A DNA stretch of 64,000 bases, taken from NCBI GenBank assembly GCA_037447605.1, contig CM074819.1, positions 372,001 to 436,000 on the forward strand, read 5' to 3'. The notes under the pieces are model-generated. The model was not told where the DNA came from and ran no database searches. It saw nothing but the letters and a program-made list of their open reading frames with translations. Source of the DNA: Zygnema circumcarinatum SAG 698-1b (taxonomy: Eukaryota; Plantae; Zygnematophyceae). The position numbers were made by a program, and so were the translations under genes. Shown piece after piece: positions 6,774 to 63,500 of this stretch. Position 1 is the first letter of the stretch, and each line of letters starts with the position of its first letter.

Positions 6774-9700
6774 CTTTTAGGGTTTTGCGAGGTTTTAGGG
6801 TTTTTGGTTTTGAGGTTGCAGGTTAGCAGGGTTATAGGGTTTTCAGGGTTTTAGGGTTTAGGGTTGTGGCAAGGGTTTTAGGGTTTAGGGTTTTGGGGTT
6901 TTACCCAGGGAGTTTTAGGTTTTGGGGTTTTTAAGGGTTTTAGGGTTTCTGGGTTTTAGGGTTTTAGGGTCTTTAGGGTTTTACTAGGGTTTTTAGGGTT
7001 TTAGGGTTTTAGGGTTTAGGGTTTTAGGGTTTTGAGTTTTAGGGTTTTAGGGTTTTAGGGTTTTAAGTTTTTCGGGTTTTGGAGTTTTACAAGGTTTTAG
7101 GGTTTTGGGGTTTTAAGGGTTTTAGGGTTTTAAGTTTTAGGGTTTTAGGGTTTTAGGGTTTTAGGGTTTTTAGGGTTTTAGGGTTTTAGGGTTTTAGGGT
7201 TTTTGGGGTTTTAGGGTTTTACTAGGGTTTTTAGGGTTTTAGGTTTTAGGGTTTTAGGGTTTTAGGGTTTTAGGGTTTTAGGGTTTTTAGGGTTTAGGGT
7301 TTTAAGTTTTAGGGTTTTTAGGGTTTTAGGGTTTTAGGGTTTAGGGTTTAGGGTTTTTAGGGTTTTTAGGGTTTTTAGGGTTTAGGGTTTTTTAGGGTTT
7401 TAGGGTTTTTAGGGTTTTAGGGTTTTAGGGTTTTGAGTTTTTAGGGTTTTAGGGTTTTAGGGTTTAGGGTTTTAGGGGTTTTAGGGTTTTTGGTTTTAGG
7501 GTTTTAAGGGTTTTAGGGTTTTTAGGGTTTTAAGTTTTAGGGTTTTAGGTTTTAGGAGGTTTTTTAGGGTTTTAGGGTTTTAGGGTTTTAGGGTTTTAGG
7601 GTTTTAGGGTTTTTAGGGTTTTTGGGTTTTGCAGGGTTTTAGGGGTTTTAAGGTTTTCAGGGTTTTAAGGAGTTTTAGGGTTTTAGGTTTTAGGGTTTTA
7701 GGGTTTTTGGGTTTTGGGTTTTAAGGTTTTAGGGTTTTAGGGTTTTAGGGTTTTAGGGTTTTAAGGTTTTAGGAGTTTTAGGGTTTTAGGGTTTTAGGGT
7801 TTTAGGGTTTTAGGGTTTTAGGGTTTTAGGGTTTTAAGGGTTTTAAAGTTTTTAGGGTTTTAGGGTTTTAGGGTTTTAGGTTTTAGGGTTTTAGGGTTTT
7901 AAGGGTTTTAGGGTTTTAGGGTTTTGGGAGTTTTAGGGTTTTAGGGTTTTAGGGTTTTAAGATTTTAGGGGTTTTAAGTTTTAGTTTAGTTTTGGGGTTT
8001 TAGAGTTTTCAGGGTTTTAGTTTCAGGGTTTTTGGTTTTAAAGTTTTTCCCAGGGTTTTAGGGTTTGAGGTTCCAAGTTTTAGGGTTTTAGGGTTTCAGG
8101 TTTCTTTGGAGTTTGGGTTTTAGGGTTTTAGGGTTTCGGGTTTCTAGGGTTTTAAAGTTTCCAAGTTTTAGGTTTTAGGGTTTTTAAGATTTCCCAGGTT
8201 TGGGGTTTAGGAGTTTTAAGGTTTAAGGTTTGCGGTTTTAGGGTTTTAAGTTTTAGGGTTTTAGGGTTTTAGGTTTTAGGGTTTTAAGGGTTTGGGGTTT
8301 TAGGGTTTTAGGGTTTTAGGGTTTTAGGGTTTTGGGTTTTACCCAGGTTTTAGGGTTTTAGGGTTTTAGGGTTTTTAGGGTTTTTAGGGTTTTAGGGTTT
8401 TAAGGTTTGCAAGTTTGGAGTTTTAGGTTTTGGGTTTTAGGGTTTTAGGGTTTTTGGGTTTTCGAGGGTTTTGGGGTTTTGGGTTTTAGGGTTTTAGGGT
8501 TTTTAGGGGTTTTAGGGTTTTAGGGTTTTAGGGTTTTAAGGGTTTTAGGGTTTTAGGGTTTTAGGAGTTTTAGGGTTTTAGGGTTTTAGGGTTTTAGGGT
8601 TTTTAGGGTTTTAGGGTTTTAGGGTTTTTAGGGTTTTAAGGGTTTTTAGGGTTTTTTAGGGTTTTTGGGGTTTTTAGGGTTTTTAGGGTTTTTAGGGTTT
8701 TAAGGGTTTTAGGGGTTTTAGGGGTTTTAGGGGTTTTAGGGGTTTTAGGGGTTTTTGGGGGTTTTGGGGTTTTACTAGGGTTTTAGGGTTTTTAGGGTTT
8801 TTAGGGTTTTTAGGGTTTTAGGGTTTTAGGGTTTTAGGGTTTTAGGGTTTTAGGGTTTTAGGGTTTTAGGGTTTTTAGGGTTTTAGAGGTTTTAGGGTTT
8901 TAGGGTTTTTAGGGTTTTTAGGGTTTAGGGTTTGGAGTTTAGGGTTTTAGGGTTTTAGGGTTTTAGGGTTTTGAGTTTTAGGGTTTTAGGGTTTTAGGGT
9001 TTTAGGGTTTTTAGGGTTTTAGGGTTTTAGGGTTTTGGGTTTTAGGTTTTAGGGTTTTAGGGTTTAGGGTTTTAGGGTTTTAAGGTTTTGGTTTTAGGGT
9101 TTTAGGAGTTTAAGGGTTTTCGGTTTTAAGGAGTTTTAGGGTTTTTACAGGGTTTTAGGGTTTTAGGGTTTTTAGGGTTTTTAGGGTTTTTAGGGTTTAG
9201 GGTTTTAGGGTTTTGGGTTTTAGGGTTTTTGGGTTTTAGGGTTTTAGGGTTTTAGGGTTTTAGGGTTTTAGGGTTTTAGGGTTTTAGGGTTTTGGGTTTT
9301 ACCCCCACAGGGTTTTAGGGTTTTAGGGTTTAGGGTTTTTGGGTTTTTTTTTTGGGTTTTTTGGGTTTTTTGGGTTTTTTTTTAGGGTTTTTAGGGTTTT
9401 TGGGTTTTTGGGTTTTTGGGTTTTTTGGGTTTTTGGGTTTTTGGGTTTTTGGGTTTTTAGGTTTTTTTTTTGGGTTTTTTGGGTTTTTGGGTTTTTGGGT
9501 TTTTGGGTTTTGGGTTTTAAGTTTTAGGGTTTTAGGGTTTTTAGGGTTTCCCAAGGTTTAGGGTTTTTGGGTTTTTTGGTTTTTTGGGTTTTTGGGTTTT
9601 TGGGTTTTTTGGGTTTTGGGGTTTTTAGGGTTTAGGGTTTTTAGGGTTTTAGGGTTTTTGGGGTTTTTAGGGTGTAGGGTTTTTAGAGTTTTAGGGTTTT

Positions 9701-10019
9701 TATCGTTTTTAGAGTTTTAGGGTTTTACTAGGGTTTTAGGGTTTTAAGGGTTTTAGGGTTTTTAAGGTTTTTGGGTTTTAGGGTTTTAGGGTTTTTGGGT
9801 TTTAGGGTTTTAGGGTTTAGTTTTAAGTTTTAGGAGTTTAGGGTTTTAGGGTTTTAGAGGTTTTAAGGTTTTGGGGTTTTAGGGTTTTAGGGTTTTAGGG
9901 TTTTAGGGTTTTAGGGTTTTGCAGGGTTTTAAGGTTTTTTGGGGTTTTAGGGTTTTGGGGTTTTGGGTTTTAGAGGTTTTAGTTTTCAGGGTTTTTGGGT
10001 TTTGGGAGTTTCCCAGGTT
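6774..10019 (+). repeat. Telomere-type tandem array, mainly TTTTAGGG with T3/T5 and other variants; G-rich strand on +
   Basis: About 3.2 kb of near-continuous T(3-5)AGGG units directly visible, ending at a 100-N gap. Confidence 0.97.
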
Positions 10020-10119
10020 NNNNNNNNNNNNNNNNNNNNNNNNNNNNNNNNNNNNNNNNNNNNNNNNNNNNNNNNNNNNNNNNNNNNNNNNNNNNNNNNN
10101 NNNNNNNNNNNNNNNNNNN
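10020..10119. other. 100-N scaffold gap (further 10-N gaps at 33021, 35475, 41625, 45659, 47321, 48533, 49552, 57977, 62345)
   Basis: N runs in the sequence. Confidence 0.99.
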
Positions 10120-29941: not shown

Positions 29942-36290
<6,349 letters not shown>

Positions 36291-37170
36291 AGAGAGAGAG
36301 ACATAGAGAGAGAGGGAGGGAGGGAGAAGGCAGTGGGAGCAAATGGGAGTGAATGTGAGAGAGGAGAGTGGGGGGAAACGAGAGAGAGAGCGAGCAATGG
36401 GAGCTAATGAGCGAATGCGAGAGAGGGAGAGGGAGGAAAGAAGGGGAAGAGATTGAAGGAGAGAGAGGGAGAGGGAGACGGAGAGGAGGAGAGGTGAGGT
36501 GAGAACGGGTGGGAAACGGTATTTCGGGAGAGGACGAGAGCTGCTCATTTTAAAGTGTGCGGAGGGGCGATTGTCATTGCCATTGATGACGTGGCTCTTT
36601 TTTTGGGGAGGGCAGGAATGGCATTGGGTTTGTATGGGGCGGAGAGAGAGAGAGAGAGTACATAGGTTCGAGCAGGAGAGGAGCAGGCGTAGAACGGAGT
36701 TTCAAATGGAGAAGATTAGATGGCCTACATTGGTATTTTTTTTTGCTGAGAGGAAGGGAGGCGGCAAAAAAATGGGAGGGATTTAGTTGCACTGAGAGCA
36801 GCCATTTCGCCGCATAAAGTGGGCGGTTTGTAGAGTGAGGGACCGTTCCATGTTCAAAGTTTCACGATAAATCAAGCGGAGGTCGGAGCTGCTTCACTTC
36901 TCTCCCTCTCCCTCTCCCTCTCCCCCTCTTTCCCTCACCCGCTTTTCCTCCCTCTGTCCTTCCCTCTCCCTCTCTCCCTTTCCTGCTCTTTCCCTCACCT
37001 TCTCTTCCTCCCCCTCCCTCTCCTTCCCTCTCTCCCTCTTCTTCCCTCTCCCCCTCCCTCGCTCTCTCTCAATCACTCTCTCTGATGTTTGTTGTGGAGT
37101 CACTCTCGCTTCAACATTTTGGCAATGCTCGAGTGCGCGTAAGCACTGGTCGCACAGCCTCCGACGAACA

Positions 37171-37686
37171 TCGTCGGATTTAGCCCTTCACTGTGGACCG
37201 CTGGATGCAGTGTCGACCGATGGGACTGCCACGGTGGACCGTCCGATGCAGGGAGGAAACGTTATCGACCGTTGGGCTGTCTCGATGAAGGACTTTTCTC
37301 TGACCGTCGGATTCTACCGTCACTTGGATGGAGACTCTGTGGACCGTTGGATTTATACTTTTTGACCGTTTTGACCGTTGCAGAATTTTAGACCGTTAGA
37401 TGCATTTCCTCGTACCGTTGGATGCAGCCAAGTGACCGTTGGATGTTTGCACGTGTGACTGTCGGATTCGAACAACCGTTGGATACGACCTCCTTAGACC
37501 CGTCGGATGCGGCTCTTCTACGCCGTTGGATGAGGCCGTGAACTGAACCGTTGGATGCAAACTCTGTCGTTGGATTCTTGTCTTTCTGACCGTTGGATTG
37601 AGATGTAACCTCTCTTGACCGTTGGATGCGGTAATTTTTTACCGTTGGATGCGAACAATTTGACCGTTTTCCACGACCATCCGATG
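37171..37686 (-). promoter_or_regulatory. Array of ~22 co-oriented GACCGTTGGAT(G)-type motifs (reverse strand matches the MSA element TCCAACGGTCA) with unique spacers
   Basis: Copies at ~37196, 37215, 37237, 37267, 37302, 37342, 37364, 37391, 37414, 37434, 37457, 37474, 37497, 37522, 37546, 37566, 37588, 37617, 37640, 37662. The repeat is certain; a regulatory role is inferred. Confidence 0.6.
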
Positions 37687-37959
37687 TCATTTCCGTTTTT
37701 GTCCACGTCGCAGACCGGCCTGTATATCACTCTCCAGGATGGCGAGTAGTAAATGACCCTCTGCGGTTTTGTTCTTAACATCGATAAAAGGAAAAGTAAC
37801 CAGTTCCTTAGCACTATCGTAGTGCAAGTGAATTAAGTGGAAATGATTATGATTTGGCCATTATGCGCATATTTCACCTTCTATGTCAATAGGGATAACA
37901 TTCTTTAAGTTCGTGGATATTGCCAAAGGACCACTGCATCAGTAGAGCAACCTACCACA

Positions 37960-38112
37960 GCCTCGTTGGTTACAGTAAAACAGTTGATCTTCACCTATTT
38001 CGGAGGTAGGGGCTTCATGCTCCACTTGTGCGGTTTTGTTCTTAACATCGATATAAGGAAAGGTGTGGGCACCACACTGGTTGCCCAGGAGCAAGGAATC
38101 ACATTGTGAGAA
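37960..38112 (-). pseudogene. sufB: 51-codon fragment of a bacterial-type Fe-S cluster assembly gene sufB
   Basis: Translates to [51 protein letters not shown], matching the SufB C-terminal motifs QCDS(L/M)[10 protein letters not shown] and EHEATTS.IGEDQ.FY..QRG. No start codon, no splice context, in-frame stops on both sides. Confidence 0.88.
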
Positions 38113-38488
38113 GCTGCTTATGAATAGCTGCTACTGATTGTAGTGGGCGTACCGCTGCAAGCTTGAAAGGGGCTGCTACTGCAGGAATATGCACTCTTTT
38201 TCAATATCCATAATTTAAGAAACTTTAGCATCAACTTAATATTATTCGGCACTGTAAAAGGTGTCCTAGGAACCAAAAAGTCTCTCTGTTCTGATCCATG
38301 TTTTAATGCGCTTAAACTTAAAGAGCCGTGAGGCAGTTCAATCCCATGTTTGCCAGTGCAATCAAAGGTGAAACCACGGTGCATAGATAGTTTATTTCAC
38401 GCTCATTTTTTCTTAACATTGGGTCCTGCCATGTTCAGCATCTTTGCTAGTTTATGAGGTGACTCTGGCTAAAGCATTAGTATGGCTA

Positions 38489-38560
38489 ATCGCCGGCGAA
38501 CGTCTAATATCGGCCAATAACCGCCGGCGATCGTCCAATATCGGCCGATAAGCCGCCAGC
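38489..38560. repeat. Two ~31-bp tandem copies of CGCCGGCGA(A/T)CGTC(T/C)AATATCGGCC(A/G)ATAA
   Basis: Directly visible at ~38490 and ~38522. Confidence 0.75.
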
Positions 38561-38758
38561 TGCCGATACGGCTCAGAGTTGCAAACTGAAGCGAAAGTTT
38601 TCCAACCTCAGAAGCGAAGTTTTTTACAACTGCTGAGCTTCAAGCCCGTCCAAACGTGTGAGATGACATCAGCACAACGGCACAAACTACGTCACCAACA
38701 CTGCGGAATGTGAGCCGCGCGGCCTAGAATTGAAATTAAAAACTTGAGACGGGGAAGG

Positions 38759-41295
<2,537 letters not shown>

Positions 41296-57639: not shown

Positions 57640-60316
57640 TCAGCGCATGAACATGAGGAAGGCGGGGTTGTTGCGCTCGTCCTTGTGCTCGTACCCGAGC
57701 GCGGCCGCGCAGAGGGCGAACTCCGCCTCCTCTTCGGGCAGCACTTGCAGCCCCGCCAAGATGTTGGCGCCCATCTCGCCCTGATGGTGGGAGAGGGAGG
57801 GAGGAGAGGGAGAGGGAGAGGGAGAGGGAGAGGGAGAGGAATAAGCAGAAAAGAAAGAGATACAAACGAGAGAGGAGAGATGGACAAGTAAGTAGCAATC
57901 GATTGGGATTGACAAAGAGGGGAGGAGGGAGAGCGAGGGAGTAAGAGAGAGAGGAAGGGAGGGTGGAGGGAGGGAGNNNNNNNNNNGAGGGAGGGAGGGA
58001 GGGAGGGAGGGAGGGAGAGAGGGAGGGAGGGATGGAGAAGAGAGGGAATGGGAGTGAGAGAGGGAGAGGGAGAGGAAGAGGGAGAGGGAAACTGATAGAG
58101 AGGAGGACAGGGAAAGAGAAACGGAGAGAGAGAGAGAGAGCACACCTGTCGGCGGTAGTGGAAGAGAGTGATATTCCACCGGGGGCTCAACATGTCCAAA
58201 AATTTCATTAGCGCTCCGGGCCGCTCCGGAAAAACAAAGCGATAAAGAACCTCGTTTGGAACTTTGGTGCGGCCCCCAACCTGCCTCAAATTCAAAAATA
58301 AAAAAAAGGGGAGGCAGAGAGAGAGAGAGAGAGAGGGAGAGAGGGAGGAGGGAAAGGAAGGGGTGCTGCTAAGTTTCCTACATTGAAATAGTCTTCCGAA
58401 GTAAAAGCTGTTGGCAAGGAAGAGAATTGTGTGCAAAAGTGCCAACCTCTCCTCTCTACTTTCCTTCCCTCTCCCCCCCTAAAAACCCTAAAACCCTAGA
58501 AACCCTTAAAACCCTTTTCCTTCTCCTCTCTCCTCTCCCTCCCCTTTCCCCTCCCACCTCCCCATTCTCCACTCTCCGATGCTCCCTCTTTTCATTTCTC
58601 CCTCCCGCCCTCTTCTCGAACTTAAAACTGACATATTCCTCGCATTCAAACACCACAAGTGAACGAACCCCAACACCCAAAAGAACAACTACTACAAAAC
58701 CTTAAAACCCACCCTAGAAATCCTAAATCCTAAATCCTAAACCCTAAAAACCCTAAACCGTAAACCCTAAACCCTAAACCCTAAGCCCTAAAAATCCTAA
58801 ACCCTAAACCCTAAACCCTAAACCCTAAAAACCCTACACCCTAAACCCTAAAACCCTAAAACGTCTTCATCGGCGGCGTACCAAGTGGCGCAGATGGTCC
58901 TTGGCGAGGTCGTTCCCGGTCATGTCGGTCGTGGCCAGTCCCGCCGCGTCCATTCGGCCAATCAGAGCGCGCAGATCCTGCTCTTCGTGGAGCCCCACAC
59001 TGCGTACAAAATAAAAGTAGGGATTGGCCGGATTTAGGGTTCAGAGAAAGTCCTAAAACTCGATTTTTTTTTTTTTTTTCTGATTTCCTGAATTTCCATA
59101 TGTTTTTTTGTATTCTACACGTGTTTGAAACATACGGATCACTAATGGTAACAAACACGTGAACCATCGGGTGACCAACCATTGCACCCAACCATTGAGA
59201 ACCAACCAACCAGCCAACCAACCATTGGCACAGCCCATGTTTCGGGGAATCGAACACCGTCGGGCTTTTTTGCAGTAGCTACCTGTAGAGCACATGCGCC
59301 GCGGACTCGTCGCTGTAGCGATACTTGAACTCCGTTATGTTCATGTTGTCGAGCTGCCCGCACATGTAACAAAAGTCAAGTCAGGCGACGTGATGTGACG
59401 TGACGTGACAAAAGGGACGTGATCGATATGACGTGACGTGACGTGACATCACGTGTCCAATAGTTCGGGTCACCTATTGCCCACATGATGTGATTTGATG
59501 CAAGTCAACGTGACACGACGTGACGCGACGTGACACGACGTGACTTGACGGTAAACTAAATCAAACCAAACCAAACCAAACCACACCGGACCATGTCTGC
59601 ATGAGTGCATGTGCATGATGTGCATGTGCATGATGTGCATGTGCATGTGCATGTGCATCATGTGCATGTGCATCATGTGCATGTGCATCATGTGCATGTG
59701 CATGTGCATGTGCATGTGCATGTGCATGTGCATGTGCATGCATGTGAGCCGACCAGTTGGCAGAAGCGTTTGAAGGAGCGAGACGCTCGGGGCGGTGGCG
59801 AAACACGACCTCCCAGGAAGCCCGTCCCAGCGAGGTCAGTGACCAATGCATGGCTCGAGAGTTCATGTTGGCGCGCTGGCGACCCGCGCTCTGCCCAGCG
59901 AGGGCCCGTGAGTGCTTCGCAGTAGTATGCCAGCGCGCTGAGCCAGCTGGCGCCCATGAGCTCCAGGAGATCACTGCAGGACCTCCTCGAACACGTCCTG
60001 CAGGAGATATAGGAGGAGATAAAGGAGGAGGAGGAGGAGGAGGAGGCTCAACATGAAGCAAACTTAGACTCAACTAGAGGGCAGGTTTACAGATTCAGAG
60101 ATTCAGATCGGATCAATAGTGGTGGTCGATGACATCGCCCCCTTCTTCTTCTTCTTCTTCTTCTTCTTCTTCTTCTTCTTCTTCTTCTTCTTCTTCTTCT
60201 TCTTCTTCTTCTTCTTCTTCTTCTTCTTCTTCTTCCTTCTTTTCGACCCAAATTCCACCCCAACTGCGGGTGTTTCAGCCAGTCGCTGCGGCTTCCTCTC
60301 TCTCTGTCTCTCTCTG

Positions 60317-60546: not shown

Positions 60547-63500
60547 CTCTCACCTTAATGGCTGCGCAAATTGCATCGCGGTTCACGAGCACGATGCCGT
60601 CCACGAGGTCTTTTGAGAGGCGGAAGGTTTCCTCTCCCACCACCTTGACCGCCACTCCGTCTGCAAACCCCCCCGCGTGCTCCAATTGGACCCTCCTCCC
60701 GTGGTGGAGGGAGAGGGCCATCGCGTTCGCATCCGCCGGCTCGACTCCGATCACGCGGACCTGTTCACACCGTGTGAATCAGCTCAAGGGTTTTCTGGGT
60801 TGGGTTGTGGGTAGACGATCATCAGCTTCTGATATTTCTAATTGAGGATATTATTCTTAGTGAAAAGGCTATACAATCTTTTTTCAGTGATTTGGATTTG
60901 AAATGGGCAACCCAAGCTTACTAAGAGTAAAAAGGATTCATAGGGGCGAATAGAGGTTCATAGGGCTCTGTATAGGCGTTGACAGGGGTGGTGGATAATA
61001 AGGCTTTATAGGGGAAAAAAAAGGGAGTTAATAGGGTTATGTAGCCGCATAATGCTCAGTAGTGTTTACTTCGGCTACAAAGGGCTTAATGGTGGTGTGT
61101 TAAAAACTTGACAGAGTGTGGTAGCACATAATAAGGATCAATAAAGGTCAACATAGTTCAGAAAGAGTTCTTCCTCCTGTTGTTCGTTATGATAGGAGGG
61201 AATGAAAAACTCACTTCCGGTCTTAAAGTCTTTATATATGCGGCTATTCCAGCGATGAGTCCGCCGCCTCCAACTGGAACAAAAACTGCATGGAGCGGGC
61301 CGGGATGCTGCCGGAGAATTTCCATTCCTACAGTTCCTTGTCCGGCGATTATGTCAGGATGGTCGAATGGAGGTATAAAAATAAGCCCCTCATCCAGAGC
61401 TCGTTGTTTGGCATAAGCCTGCAGGATCATGAAAACGGTAAATCATCAGTTATCGGGAAAATATTGAACATAGGAAGACCGGAATACTTCCACTTCGAAA
61501 CCCTAGAGAAGGCCACAAACCTGAAAGTCGGAACGCAGAATCTTGAACCCTAAACCTTAAATCCATGACCTAAACCCTCGACCCCTCACCCTAACCGCTA
61601 AACCCCCAAATCTAAATTGTCAACCCATTTACCCCTCACTCATCACTTTTCCTCACCCCTCACCCTCAAACCCATCAACCCATCAGTCATCACCCAGCCT
61701 CACTCCGCGCCCCCCTCCTCCCTTTCTTCACCCCTAAACCCTAACCCTAGCCCTAAACCCTAACTCTTAGACCCTGACCACTAGCCCTTCACCCCAAAGC
61801 CTCACCCCTGAACCCTAAACCCTAAACCCTAACCCTAAACCCTAACCCGAAACCCCGCCCCCTACGCCCTAACCCCTAAACCCCGCCCCCTACGCCCTAA
61901 CCCCTAAACCCCTCACCCCTAAACCCTAACCCTAAACCCTAACCCTAAACCCCAGTCCTAAACTCCAACCCCTACGCCCTAACCCCCTAAACCCCTCACC
62001 CCTAAACCCTAACCCTAACCCTCACCCCCAGCCCTAACCCCTAGTACCAGCCTGGGCCTGGGCCTGGGCCTGACCTGCGCCTCGTCGTAGGCGTCCCCGA
62101 CGAGCACGACCTCGGCCCCGAGGCGCTCCACTTGGCGCCACTTTATGGCGGGCGTGGTCCGCGGCATCGCCACCGCCGCGCGGCAGCCGAGGCGCGCCGC
62201 GGCGAGGGCCACGCCCTGCGCGTGGTTCCCCGCGGAGGAGCACACCACGCCGCGGGCCAACTGCGCGGGGGAGAGCCGGGCCATCATGTTGTACGCGCCG
62301 CGCAGCTTGAAGGAGAACACCTGGGGGGAAGGGGGGGGGGAGGGNNNNNNNNNNGGGAGGGGATGGGGGAGGGGGGAAGGGAGGGCGGGGGGAAGGGAGG
62401 TGAGGGAGGGAGGGAGGGGGTGGGGAAGGTGGGAAGGGAGGGGGGGGAGGGAGGTGAGGGAGGGAGGGAGGGGGCGGGGGAGCGGGGAAGGGAGGGGGGG
62501 TAGGGTGAGGGTAGGGTAGGGAGGAGGGAGGGGGAGAGGGAGGGAGAGAAGGGGATGAGGATGCGAAAGGGATGAAAGTAAAGGGGGAGAGGAGGAAAGG
62601 GGAGAATGAGAGAGAGAAAGAAAGAGCGGGACGGGAACGGAAGGATGAGGATAAGGGAAAGGAGGAAGGAGAAGGGGGAGAAGGAGAGAGAAATGGAGCG
62701 ATGGGAGAGAAAGGGAGGGAGGGGCAGACGAGGAGGGGGAGGGTGGGGAGGAAGGGGTTTCGTGCACAGTAATTGACAGGGTACAAAAATTACCACGTGG
62801 AGATTGTAAAACCATTCAAAAACTAAACTTTGAGTTGGAGTTTTTCGCTTTTGGGCTTTTGCGAGATTAGGGTTCAGGCCTTCTGGTTTCAAGTTAAAAC
62901 CTTGCGGTCTTGAATTGTTGGCTTTCAATTGTTTAGTTTTTAAATTCAGAATAACTATTAAAACTGCGTTTTCTGAAGGATTAAGGTTTAAACATTCCAT
63001 TTCTTAAAACGCAAAAGCATTTCTCCAACCAAAACCCTAAACTTTAAGCCACTTGAATCCAAACACGGAAGCGTAATTCCTTGAACTTTAAACCTAAACC
63101 GTTCAACCGACACCTTCGGAATTCAGACTCGAGGACATTAACCCTAAACCCTAACCCCTGACCCCTAAGCCCTAAATCCTAAACCCCAAACCCCACCTGC
63201 TGCATGTCCTCCCTCTTCAAATAAATATTGTTCCCCATCCGCTCGCTCAGCTTCTCCGCCTTCTCCAGCGGCGACTCCACTGCCACATCATACACCTGCG
63301 AGGTCAAGATCCTCCGCAGGTACTCCACGCAGTCAGCTCCGTTCCCCTCAACGGAGTCCGGAACTGAAACTGCCCCGTTCTCACCCGTTCGATGTCCATA
63401 CCCGCTCCCGTTCGCAGGGTTTCGGTAGGGTTGAGGGACGGCTCCGAGCATGCCCGCCTCATATTGTAACGACTCGGGAGCCACGCGCAGAAGCTCCGGC

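What the first reader, a model, noticed from the sequence alone, without database searches (positions are those of the whole stretch)
37740..38460. Decayed Bacteroidota-like sufB fragment in a scrambled AT-rich patch: candidate bacterium-to-alga DNA transfer
The minus strand 38112-37960 encodes 51 aa of the SufB C-terminus. As I recall the family, CGAHTFPY is the proteobacterial/Bacteroidota form and DSLLLG..FYCNQRG is typical of Bacteroidota, whereas plant/cyanobacterial SufB reads (A)ANT(Y/F)PY..FYFQQRG; streptophyte plastomes generally lack ycf24. Conserved EHEATTS(K/R) is changed to EHEAPTSE, homology stops abruptly at both ends, and a 33-bp piece (FP(Y/F)IDVKNKTA) is duplicated at ~37762-37795. 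This points to integration, rearrangement and decay rather than clean contamination. The rest of the patch looks like further coding fragments I could not identify. The donor lineage is inferred from memory.
Basis: partly seen in the sequence, partly recalled or inferred. Interest (0 to 1): 0.8.

Follow-up and report, generated by a model that had tools for sequence, protein, structure and literature searches.

The report
Dead bacterial sufB scrap in alga
A 157-letter dead piece of a bacterial iron-sulfur-cluster gene (sufB), most like those of Bacteroidota, lies between two normal genes of a green alga related to land plants, a small fossil showing that bacterial DNA gets pasted into this alga's chromosomes.

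Summary
Minus strand 38117-37960 encodes 52 residues of the SufB C-terminal core (Pfam SUFBD_core E 4.5e-15; E. coli SufB residues 401-453, E 3e-22). A 36-37-bp second copy lies at 37762-37798. Homology stops abruptly at both ends. Three residues (S1, P36, E39) are absent or nearly absent in 235 SufB homologues, so the piece is dead.

The nearest relatives are Bacteroidota. GTDB genomes reach 88% amino-acid and 81.6% nucleotide identity. One environmental contig, whose SufB groups with Cytophagales, reaches 90% and 87.3%. Likelihood placement puts 97% of the weight inside Bacteroidota, but the best placement outside is not rejected (AU 0.095).

All 157 sampled 31-mers of 37300-38800, which runs from the patch into the 5' end of the neighbouring kinase gene (dNK), occur in contigs of 15 runs from seven studies, so a one-off assembly chimera is unlikely. 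Read laying itself failed.

The patch is intergenic, between the HSP70 stop (36288) and the dNK start (38771). The rest of the AT-rich patch matched nothing, so "further coding fragments" is unsupported.

Best reading: bacterial DNA captured during chromosome break repair and decaying since, without function. Earlier unchecked notes of this scan list similar scraps elsewhere in this genome on other DNA. Interest is moderate.

The parts
37960..38117 (-). Dead fragment of a bacterial sufB gene, 52 codons equivalent to E. coli SufB residues 401-453. There is no start codon, no upstream or downstream part of the gene, and three substitutions at near-invariant residues.
   Evidence: identity as SufB. 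(88-90% amino-acid and up to 87.3% nucleotide identity to Bacteroidota sufB, with abrupt ends). (S1, P36, E39 aberrant).
37762..37798 (-). Second, 36-37-bp copy of the FP(Y/F)IDVKNKTA stretch of the same sufB, in direct orientation and 267 bp from its counterpart at 38029-38064.
   Evidence: 94% identity, E 7e-10; it keeps ACT like the bacterial relative where the long copy has ACC, and has TTT where both others have TAT, so each copy carries a private change; no further extension.
37740..38460 (.). AT-rich patch that holds both sufB pieces. The remaining roughly 530 bp is of unknown origin, either foreign filler or native intergenic DNA.
   Evidence: GC 0.33-0.51 per 100 bp. No Pfam, Rfam, plasmid, tblastx or Atlas match outside the sufB pieces. 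The 4-mer make-up falls in the bacterial range but so do other AT-rich host stretches.
36288..36290 (+). Context: stop codon of the upstream HSP70 gene, marking the left edge of the intergenic region.
   Evidence: Sequence ...[12 protein letters not shown] read. The HSP70 Pfam match of an upstream exon has E 3.7e-55.
38771..38872 (+). Context: first coding exon of the downstream deoxynucleoside kinase gene (MAAVRGRTVSFEGNIGVGKSTLL...), followed by a GT donor at 38873.
   Evidence: The dNK profile matches positions 2-22 (E 0.0023) here and positions 66-121 (E 1.8e-4) in a later exon at 39999-40208. High-depth contigs of two runs begin at 38653 and 38736.
38877..39199 (+). Context: degenerate plant-type telomere-repeat array (AGGGTTT, about 46 copies) that fills most of dNK intron 1. 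It is not contiguous with the sufB patch.
   Evidence: TRF: period 7, 46.4 copies, 72% matches. Sequence read.

Best explanation
This is a non-functional relic of bacterial DNA in the alga's nuclear genome. A short piece of a bacterial sufB gene (157 bp) and a second 37-bp piece of the same gene became part of the 2.5-kb spacer between the HSP70 gene and the deoxynucleoside kinase gene. The pieces may have arrived with other unrecognisable filler. The long piece lies about 650 bp upstream of the kinase start codon. The donor was most likely a Bacteroidota bacterium related to an environmental lineage whose SufB groups with Cytophagales. The most likely route is capture of free bacterial DNA fragments as filler during end-joining repair of a chromosome break, the route by which organelle DNA (NUMTs, NUPTs) enters nuclei. 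The short second copy would then be either a second donor fragment or a templated copy made during that repair. Since insertion the piece has drifted neutrally and does nothing. Shown here: identity as sufB, bacterial affinity, decay, partial duplication, and presence in many read sets. Inferred: the repair mechanism, the timing and the absence of function.
For: SufB identity. Bacterial, Bacteroidota-like affinity: 66 of the 80 best GTDB loci are Bacteroidota and the 21 best are all Bacteroidota, at 83-88% amino-acid identity. Nucleotide identity is 81.6% at most in GTDB and 87.3% to metagenome contig Ga0316607_1000019 (L083). That contig's SufB nests with Cytophagales rows (SH-aLRT 94.9) and its UvrA falls in Bacteroidota clusters. 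Placing the fragment on every branch of a fixed backbone tree gives likelihood weight 0.974 inside Bacteroidota, 0.022 on its stem and 0.0045 outside, with the best branch sister to L083. Labelled Proteobacteria reach only 63-79% in the plasmid collection. Among 1.84 billion representative proteins, nearly all of the 150 best carry the bacterial CGAHT(F/V/I)PY motif, and the three with FYF(Q/A)QRG reach only 69-77%. Decay: residues S1, P36 and E39 are absent or nearly absent in 235 homologues. Of 19 codons that differ from L083, 14 are synonymous, so most divergence arose in living bacteria and only a few changes after transfer. Integration: homology ends abruptly within a contig that runs on into host genes. 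All 157 sampled 31-mers of 37300-38800 are found in Logan contigs of 15 runs from seven studies, 2019-2025. One 334-nt contig of run X17 bridges the right edge of the AT-rich patch without a mismatch. Rearrangement: the 36-bp direct copy.
Against: Assignment to Bacteroidota is not exclusive. The best placement outside (a Coxiellaceae MAG) is only 5.1 log-likelihood units worse, AU 0.095, and 52 residues carry little signal. A whole-tree AU test said nothing about the fragment. The host's own SUFB and organelle genomes were not available for comparison. Read laying laid almost nothing on the patch, so there is no depth profile and no single read or contig shown to span host DNA, sufB piece and host DNA; integration rests on 31-mer presence. 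No empty site, target-site feature or junction microhomology was examined, so the repair mechanism is inference. About 530 bp of the patch is unexplained.
Confidence: 0.78

Rival explanations
1. Assembly artefact: a read from a contaminating bacterium in the culture was joined by mistake to algal sequence, so the fragment is not in the algal chromosome.
For: Algal cultures commonly carry Bacteroidota (general knowledge). Read laying could not show a spanning read or contig.
Against: Only 157 bp is bacterial, with abrupt ends, invariant residues destroyed and a 36-bp partial duplicate, none of which fits a contaminant read. All sampled 31-mers across both junctions and on into the dNK 5' region are present in 15 runs from seven studies. 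The nearest known bacterium is only 87% identical.
Confidence: 0.03
2. Host-derived pseudogene: a fragment of the alga's own nuclear SUFB, or of an organelle-encoded sufB/ycf24 (a NUPT-like insertion), not bacterial DNA.
For: Organelle and paralogue fragments are the commonest source of such scraps in plant genomes (general knowledge). Other notes of this scan report NUPTs in this genome (unchecked). The host SUFB could not be compared directly.
Against: The best DNA and protein matches are Bacteroidota. The three hits with the FYF(Q/A)QRG motif, which I recall as plant/cyanobacterial, reach only 69-77% against 88-90%. Green-plant SUFB is of cyanobacterial descent and streptophyte plastomes lack ycf24 (from memory, not tested here).
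Confidence: 0.05
3. A real bacterial relic, but the donor was not a Bacteroidota. It could have been, for example, an intracellular gammaproteobacterium of the Legionellales/Coxiellaceae or another phylum with a similar SufB.
For: A Coxiellaceae MAG reaches 85% amino-acid identity and a Verrucomicrobiota-labelled contig 85%. Legionella adelaidensis reaches 77% nucleotide identity. The best outside placement is not rejected (AU 0.095).
Against: The 21 best GTDB hits are all Bacteroidota. The closest sequence by a clear margin (87.3% against 81.6% or less in DNA) is on a contig that is Bacteroidota by both its SufB tree position and its UvrA. Likelihood weight outside is 0.0045.
Confidence: 0.1
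4. The patch has been co-opted, for example as part of the dNK promoter or as a small transcribed ORF.
For: It lies 311-1030 bp upstream of the dNK start codon and about 190 bp or more upstream of where high-depth contigs begin. A run guessed to be RNA holds all its 31-mers. A 92-codon stop-free stretch lies at 38121-38396 on the minus strand.
Against: The sufB frame is closed by stops on both sides and has lost invariant residues. The 92-codon stretch has no homologue and a low protein-likeness score, and one such stretch is not unexpected by chance in 800 bp. RNA libraries can hold DNA, and no strand or splice evidence was obtained.
Confidence: 0.04

Closest known systems
Nuclear insertions of endosymbiont or other bacterial DNA in eukaryotes, such as Wolbachia 'nuwts' in arthropods and nematodes (reviewed in PMC3798261; aphid example PMC2829048)
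   Same: Non-functional pieces of bacterial genes sit in nuclear chromosomes, decay neutrally and are thought to enter through break repair.
   Different: The host is a streptophyte green alga and no symbiont is known. The piece is very short (157 + 37 bp) and the donor looks like a Bacteroidota, not an alphaproteobacterial germline symbiont.
NUMT/NUPT mosaics and filler DNA at repaired double-strand breaks in plants and yeast (overview in PMC5570036; a large NUMT in PMC9071559)
   Same: Short, abruptly ending, sometimes duplicated or scrambled fragments of extrachromosomal DNA are inserted into non-coding nuclear DNA.
   Different: The source sequence is not organellar. Junction microhomology and an empty ancestral site, the usual hallmarks, were not examined here.
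Bacterial SufB, the scaffold subunit of the SUF Fe-S cluster assembly complex (E. coli SufB, PDB 5awf)
   Same: The 52 residues align without gaps to residues 401-453 of E. coli SufB, part of the C-terminal core domain.
   Different: Only about 11% of the protein is present. There is no start, no N-terminal domain and no C-terminal helices, three near-invariant residues are replaced, and it cannot make a SufB protein.
Other bacterial gene scraps noted by this scan in the same genome (infB; thyA+polX; ppa; gpmI; lpdA)
   Same: They are short dead pieces of bacterial housekeeping genes in introns or spacers. One is also called Bacteroidota-like and one is a two-gene mosaic.
   Different: They are unchecked AI notes on other DNA. 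I could not read those sequences, so a common donor or mechanism is untested.

Membership tests
SufB / SUFBD_core (PF01458) | Significant match to the family profile | tested here: met
   E 4.5e-15, 56.2 bits against a cut-off of 27, profile positions 167-219 of 232. E. coli SufB E 3.3e-22.
SufB / SUFBD_core (PF01458) | Complete open reading frame covering the N-terminal domain, the whole core and the C-terminal helices (about 480 aa) | tested here: not met
   Only 52 codons are homologous. Stops and unrelated sequence lie on both sides, and tblastx finds no other sufB part within 2.2 kb apart from the 37-bp copy.
SufB / SUFBD_core (PF01458) | Family-invariant residues kept (N before F/Y-S/T-Q-C-D-S; HEA-T/S-TS-K/R) | tested here: not met
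   S1 is seen in 1 of 215, P36 in 0 of 235 and E39 in 0 of 235 homologues.
Bacteroidota SufB clade (donor lineage) | Highest identity to members of the clade in both protein and DNA | tested here: met
   88% amino-acid and 81.6% nucleotide identity to GTDB Bacteroidota. 90.4% and 87.3% to L083, which groups with Cytophagales. Labelled Proteobacteria reach 85% at most.
Bacteroidota SufB clade (donor lineage) | Phylogenetic placement inside the clade with alternatives rejected | tested here: inconclusive
   Likelihood weight 0.974 inside and 0.0045 outside, but the best outside placement has AU 0.095 (0.21 before L083 was added).
Plant/cyanobacterial-type SUFB (the host's own gene or a plastid ycf24) | Closer to plant or cyanobacterial SufB than to other bacteria | tested here: inconclusive
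   No labelled plant or cyanobacterial sequence could be fetched. Unlabelled hits with FYF(Q/A)QRG reach 69-77%. The fold-based route to Swiss-Prot entries failed.
Foreign-DNA insertion by break repair (NUMT/NUPT/nuwt-like) | Short non-coding fragment with abrupt ends embedded in host DNA, confirmed outside the reference assembly | tested here: met
   Abrupt ends. Host genes on both sides. All sampled 31-mers are present in 15 runs from seven studies. This is k-mer evidence only; no spanning read was shown.
Foreign-DNA insertion by break repair (NUMT/NUPT/nuwt-like) | Empty ancestral site in a relative, or junction microhomology or templated filler traceable to a nearby template | not testable with these tools
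   No sister genome or other strain was available. The 36-bp copy fits templated or multi-fragment filler but does not prove it.

The most novel reading that the evidence does not exclude
The sufB scrap is one of a population of short dead fragments from a single Bacteroidota lineage scattered through this alga's chromosomes (this scan also noted infB, thyA+polX, ppa, gpmI and lpdA pieces). That would record a long and intimate, possibly intracellular, association with that bacterium and a steady trickle of its DNA into the nucleus of a close algal relative of land plants, which would be the raw material for the functional bacterial genes already claimed for this lineage.
Probability: 0.2. Interest if true: 0.7.

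Novelty: new member of a known kind. Interest (0 to 1): 0.45.

Why it matters
Whether bacterial DNA routinely reaches the nuclei of plants and their algal relatives is still argued, largely because claimed transfers are old, functional genes that can also be explained by contamination or differential loss. A dead, truncated, partly duplicated bacterial fragment between two ordinary host genes cannot be explained by selection or by vertical descent. It shows the first step of transfer, physical integration, without the later step of domestication. One such scrap is a curiosity. If the several scraps noted in this genome share a donor, they would give a measurable rate and source of bacterium-to-alga DNA flow in the lineage that gave rise to land plants.

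Tried and rejected
1. Identifying the rest of the patch gave nothing outside the sufB pieces. I tried tblastx and blastn against 80 GTDB sufB loci with 3-kb flanks, against six metagenome loci and against 21 kb around the closest relative's sufB. I also tried Pfam on ten stop-free pieces, Rfam, blastn and tblastn against plasmids and the ESM Atlas on the 92-codon piece.

2. Read laying on 37070-38870 with four runs laid almost nothing because of its filter. It gave no depth profile and no spanning record, and is not evidence of absence.

3. A whole-tree AU test for holding Bacteroidota together without the fragment was uninformative, because the constrained search found a better backbone. I replaced it with placement on every branch of a fixed backbone.

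4. The listing of cluster members, the look-up of encoding contigs on P0139 and the Atlas on the fragment gave no taxon labels.

5. Folding the 52-residue fragment to reach labelled Swiss-Prot SufBs gave pLDDT 52.7 and meaningless matches.

6. The 4-mer likelihood ratio, host against bacterium, puts the patch in the bacterial range. It also flags ordinary AT-rich host DNA, including an HSP70 exon, so I rejected it as evidence.

7. I first thought the neighbouring telomere-like array marked a healed break beside the patch. I rejected this because the array lies inside dNK intron 1, separated from the patch by the dNK 5' region and exon 1, and such arrays are common in this genome.

8. A longer, degenerate second sufB copy around 37699-37797 was hinted by weak tblastx hits, but alignment did not support it.

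Full report
**What is there**

The minus strand of 38130-37948 reads [61 protein letters not shown]. Residues 6-58 match the Pfam SUFBD_core profile at positions 167-219 of 232, with E 4.5e-15 and 56 bits against a cut-off of 27. The same residues align without gaps to residues 401-453 of E. coli SufB (PDB 5awf), E 3.3e-22. This is far beyond chance.

A 36-nt direct repeat at 94% identity links 37762-37797 to 38029-38064 (blastn E 7e-10). The short copy encodes [12 protein letters not shown]. Alignment shows that it does not extend beyond about 37 bp.

**It is dead**

I aligned the fragment to 235 SufB sequences drawn from the 150 best database hits and 86 bacterial loci. Three of its residues are essentially never seen:
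- S1, where 214 of 215 sequences have N.
- P36, where all 235 have T or S.
- E39, where 230 of 235 have K or R.

DNA homology to bacterial sufB begins and ends abruptly at 38117 and 37960/61. Beyond these points the window and the bacterial gene are unrelated. No other part of sufB, sufC, sufD or any neighbouring bacterial gene is detectable within 2.2 kb. Stop codons close the frame on both sides.

**Where it came from**

Of the 80 best, 66 are Bacteroidota. The 21 best are all Bacteroidota, at 83-88% amino-acid identity. The best non-Bacteroidota rows are a Verrucomicrobiota-labelled contig and a Coxiellaceae MAG, both at 85%. DNA identity in this set peaks at 81.6%.

I then scanned metagenome contigs with a degenerate DNA pattern for the peptide [18 protein letters not shown]. 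This found six contigs. One of them, Ga0316607_1000019 (L083), is 87.3% identical in DNA over 157 bp and 90.4% in protein. Its SufB groups with Cytophagales rows (SH-aLRT 94.9). The UvrA on the same contig falls in Bacteroidota clusters. The identical SufB occurs on 18 environmental contigs.

I placed the fragment on each branch of a fixed full-length SufB backbone and compared likelihoods:
- The best position is sister to L083 (weight 0.20).
- Total weight is 0.974 inside Bacteroidota, 0.022 on its stem and 0.0045 outside.
- The best outside placement is 5.1 log-likelihood units worse, with AU 0.095.

The Bacteroidota assignment is therefore clearly favoured but not proven on 52 residues.

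Of the 19 codons that differ from L083, 14 differ only synonymously. Most of that divergence therefore arose between living bacteria, and the true donor is an unsampled relative. Only a handful of changes, including the three aberrant residues, date from after the transfer. The two copies of the 36-bp stretch differ at two sites, one private to each copy when judged against L083. This fits a duplication at or near the time of insertion and a few per cent of neutral decay since. I do not attempt an absolute date.

**Not the host's own gene, as far as could be tested**

In a search of 1.84 billion representative proteins, nearly all of the 150 best hits carry the bacterial CGAHT(F/V/I)PY motif. 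The three with FYF(Q/A)QRG, the form I recall for plants and cyanobacteria, reach only 69-77%. Labelled Proteobacteria in the plasmid collection reach 63-79%, Firmicutes about 40% and Archaea about 35%.

I could not obtain a labelled plant or cyanobacterial SufB, or the host's SUFB, with the tools. The route through a predicted fold failed. This rival is disfavoured, not excluded.

**Integrated, not contamination**

The fragment is 157 bp with broken invariants and a partial duplicate, which is not what a contaminant read looks like. The upstream HSP70 gene ends at a TAG at 36288-36290. The first exon of the deoxynucleoside kinase gene, MAAVRGRTVSFEGNIGVGKSTLL..., runs 38771-38872 and is followed by a GT donor.

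A search of public runs with 37300-38800 spans both sufB junctions and reaches the kinase 5' region. It found 15 runs from seven studies (2019-2025) of one organism holding all 157 sampled 31-mers. At about one sampled word per ten bases, each junction is covered by about three words. That coverage is my inference from the sampling density. This rules out a chimera peculiar to the reference assembly.

Read laying laid almost nothing because of its filter. One 334-nt contig bridges the right edge of the AT-rich patch (38253-38586) without a mismatch. High-depth contigs begin at 38653 and 38736, which looks like the 5' end of the kinase mRNA. No depth profile or spanning molecule was obtained.

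**The rest of the patch**

The roughly 530 bp of 37740-38460 outside the two sufB pieces matched nothing:
- Pfam on ten stop-free pieces.
- Rfam.
- Plasmid DNA and protein searches.
- The Atlas on the 92-codon piece.
- 21 kb around the closest relative's sufB.

Its 4-mer make-up is in the bacterial range. The same score flags ordinary AT-rich host DNA, including an HSP70 exon, so it proves nothing. These bases may be unrecognisable donor DNA or native spacer.

**Context and mechanism**

The patch lies in the 2.5-kb spacer between two co-oriented host genes, 311-1030 bp upstream of the kinase start codon. I first considered that the neighbouring telomere-type array (38877-39199, about 46 degenerate AGGGTTT units) marked a healed break. 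That array is in fact kinase intron 1. Such arrays are frequent in this window and genome, so I dropped the idea.

The best-supported mechanism, by analogy with NUMTs, NUPTs and filler DNA at repaired breaks, is capture of free bacterial DNA fragments during end-joining repair. The short second copy would then be either a second donor fragment or a templated copy. This step is inferred, not shown.

**Relation to earlier notes**

The scan's notebook lists other short bacterial gene scraps in this same genome on other DNA: a Bacteroidota-like infB piece, a thyA+polX mosaic, and ppa, gpmI and lpdA pieces. These are unchecked leads and I could not read those sequences. If they are real and share a donor, the sufB scrap is one trace of a sustained DNA flow from one bacterial associate.

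**Verdict**

This is a real, integrated, decayed fragment of a bacterial sufB gene, most probably from a Bacteroidota, with no function. It is a new example of a known kind of event, the nuclear insertion of non-functional bacterial DNA, in a host group where few such cases are documented. Interest is moderate on its own and higher as part of a genome-wide pattern that remains to be tested.

Noticed in passing
window 6991-9916 (100-N gap at 10020-10119): A roughly 3-kb G-strand array made mostly of TTTTAGGG units, with TTTAGGG and TTTTTGGG variants. GC is 0.35-0.38 and GC skew about +0.9. It ends next to an assembly gap.
   Followed up: no
window 38877-39199: A degenerate TTTAGGG-type telomere-repeat array (about 46 units) fills most of intron 1 of the deoxynucleoside kinase gene, starting 4 bp after the GT donor.
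   Followed up: partly
window 37171-37686: An array of co-oriented ACCGTTGGAT(G) motifs with unique spacers lies just upstream of the sufB patch, in the same spacer upstream of the kinase gene. The scan already noted it as s1-378388.
   Followed up: no
window 38487-38557: A 31-bp tandem repeat (2.3 copies, TAACCGCCGGCGAACGTCCAATATCGGCCAA) lies between the AT-rich patch and the point where high-depth kinase contigs begin.
   Followed up: no
window 58802-58830 and 61813-61949: Short C-strand telomere-like arrays (CCCTAAA/CCCTAA), in the opposite orientation to the arrays at 7-10 kb and 38.9 kb.
   Followed up: no
L083 5941-7386; L088 10001-11446: In the closest bacterial relative, sufB is not next to sufC, sufD or sufS. 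It lies between an RNase R gene and a 1165-aa HD-domain protein gene. The identical SufB is found on 18 environmental contigs.
   Followed up: partly
runs X17 and X21 on window 38653-38870: Two runs labelled 'DNA?' show depth 64-74 on contigs that start at 38653 and 38736, against 3.4 just upstream. They look more like RNA libraries with the kinase mRNA 5' end than like DNA.
   Followed up: no
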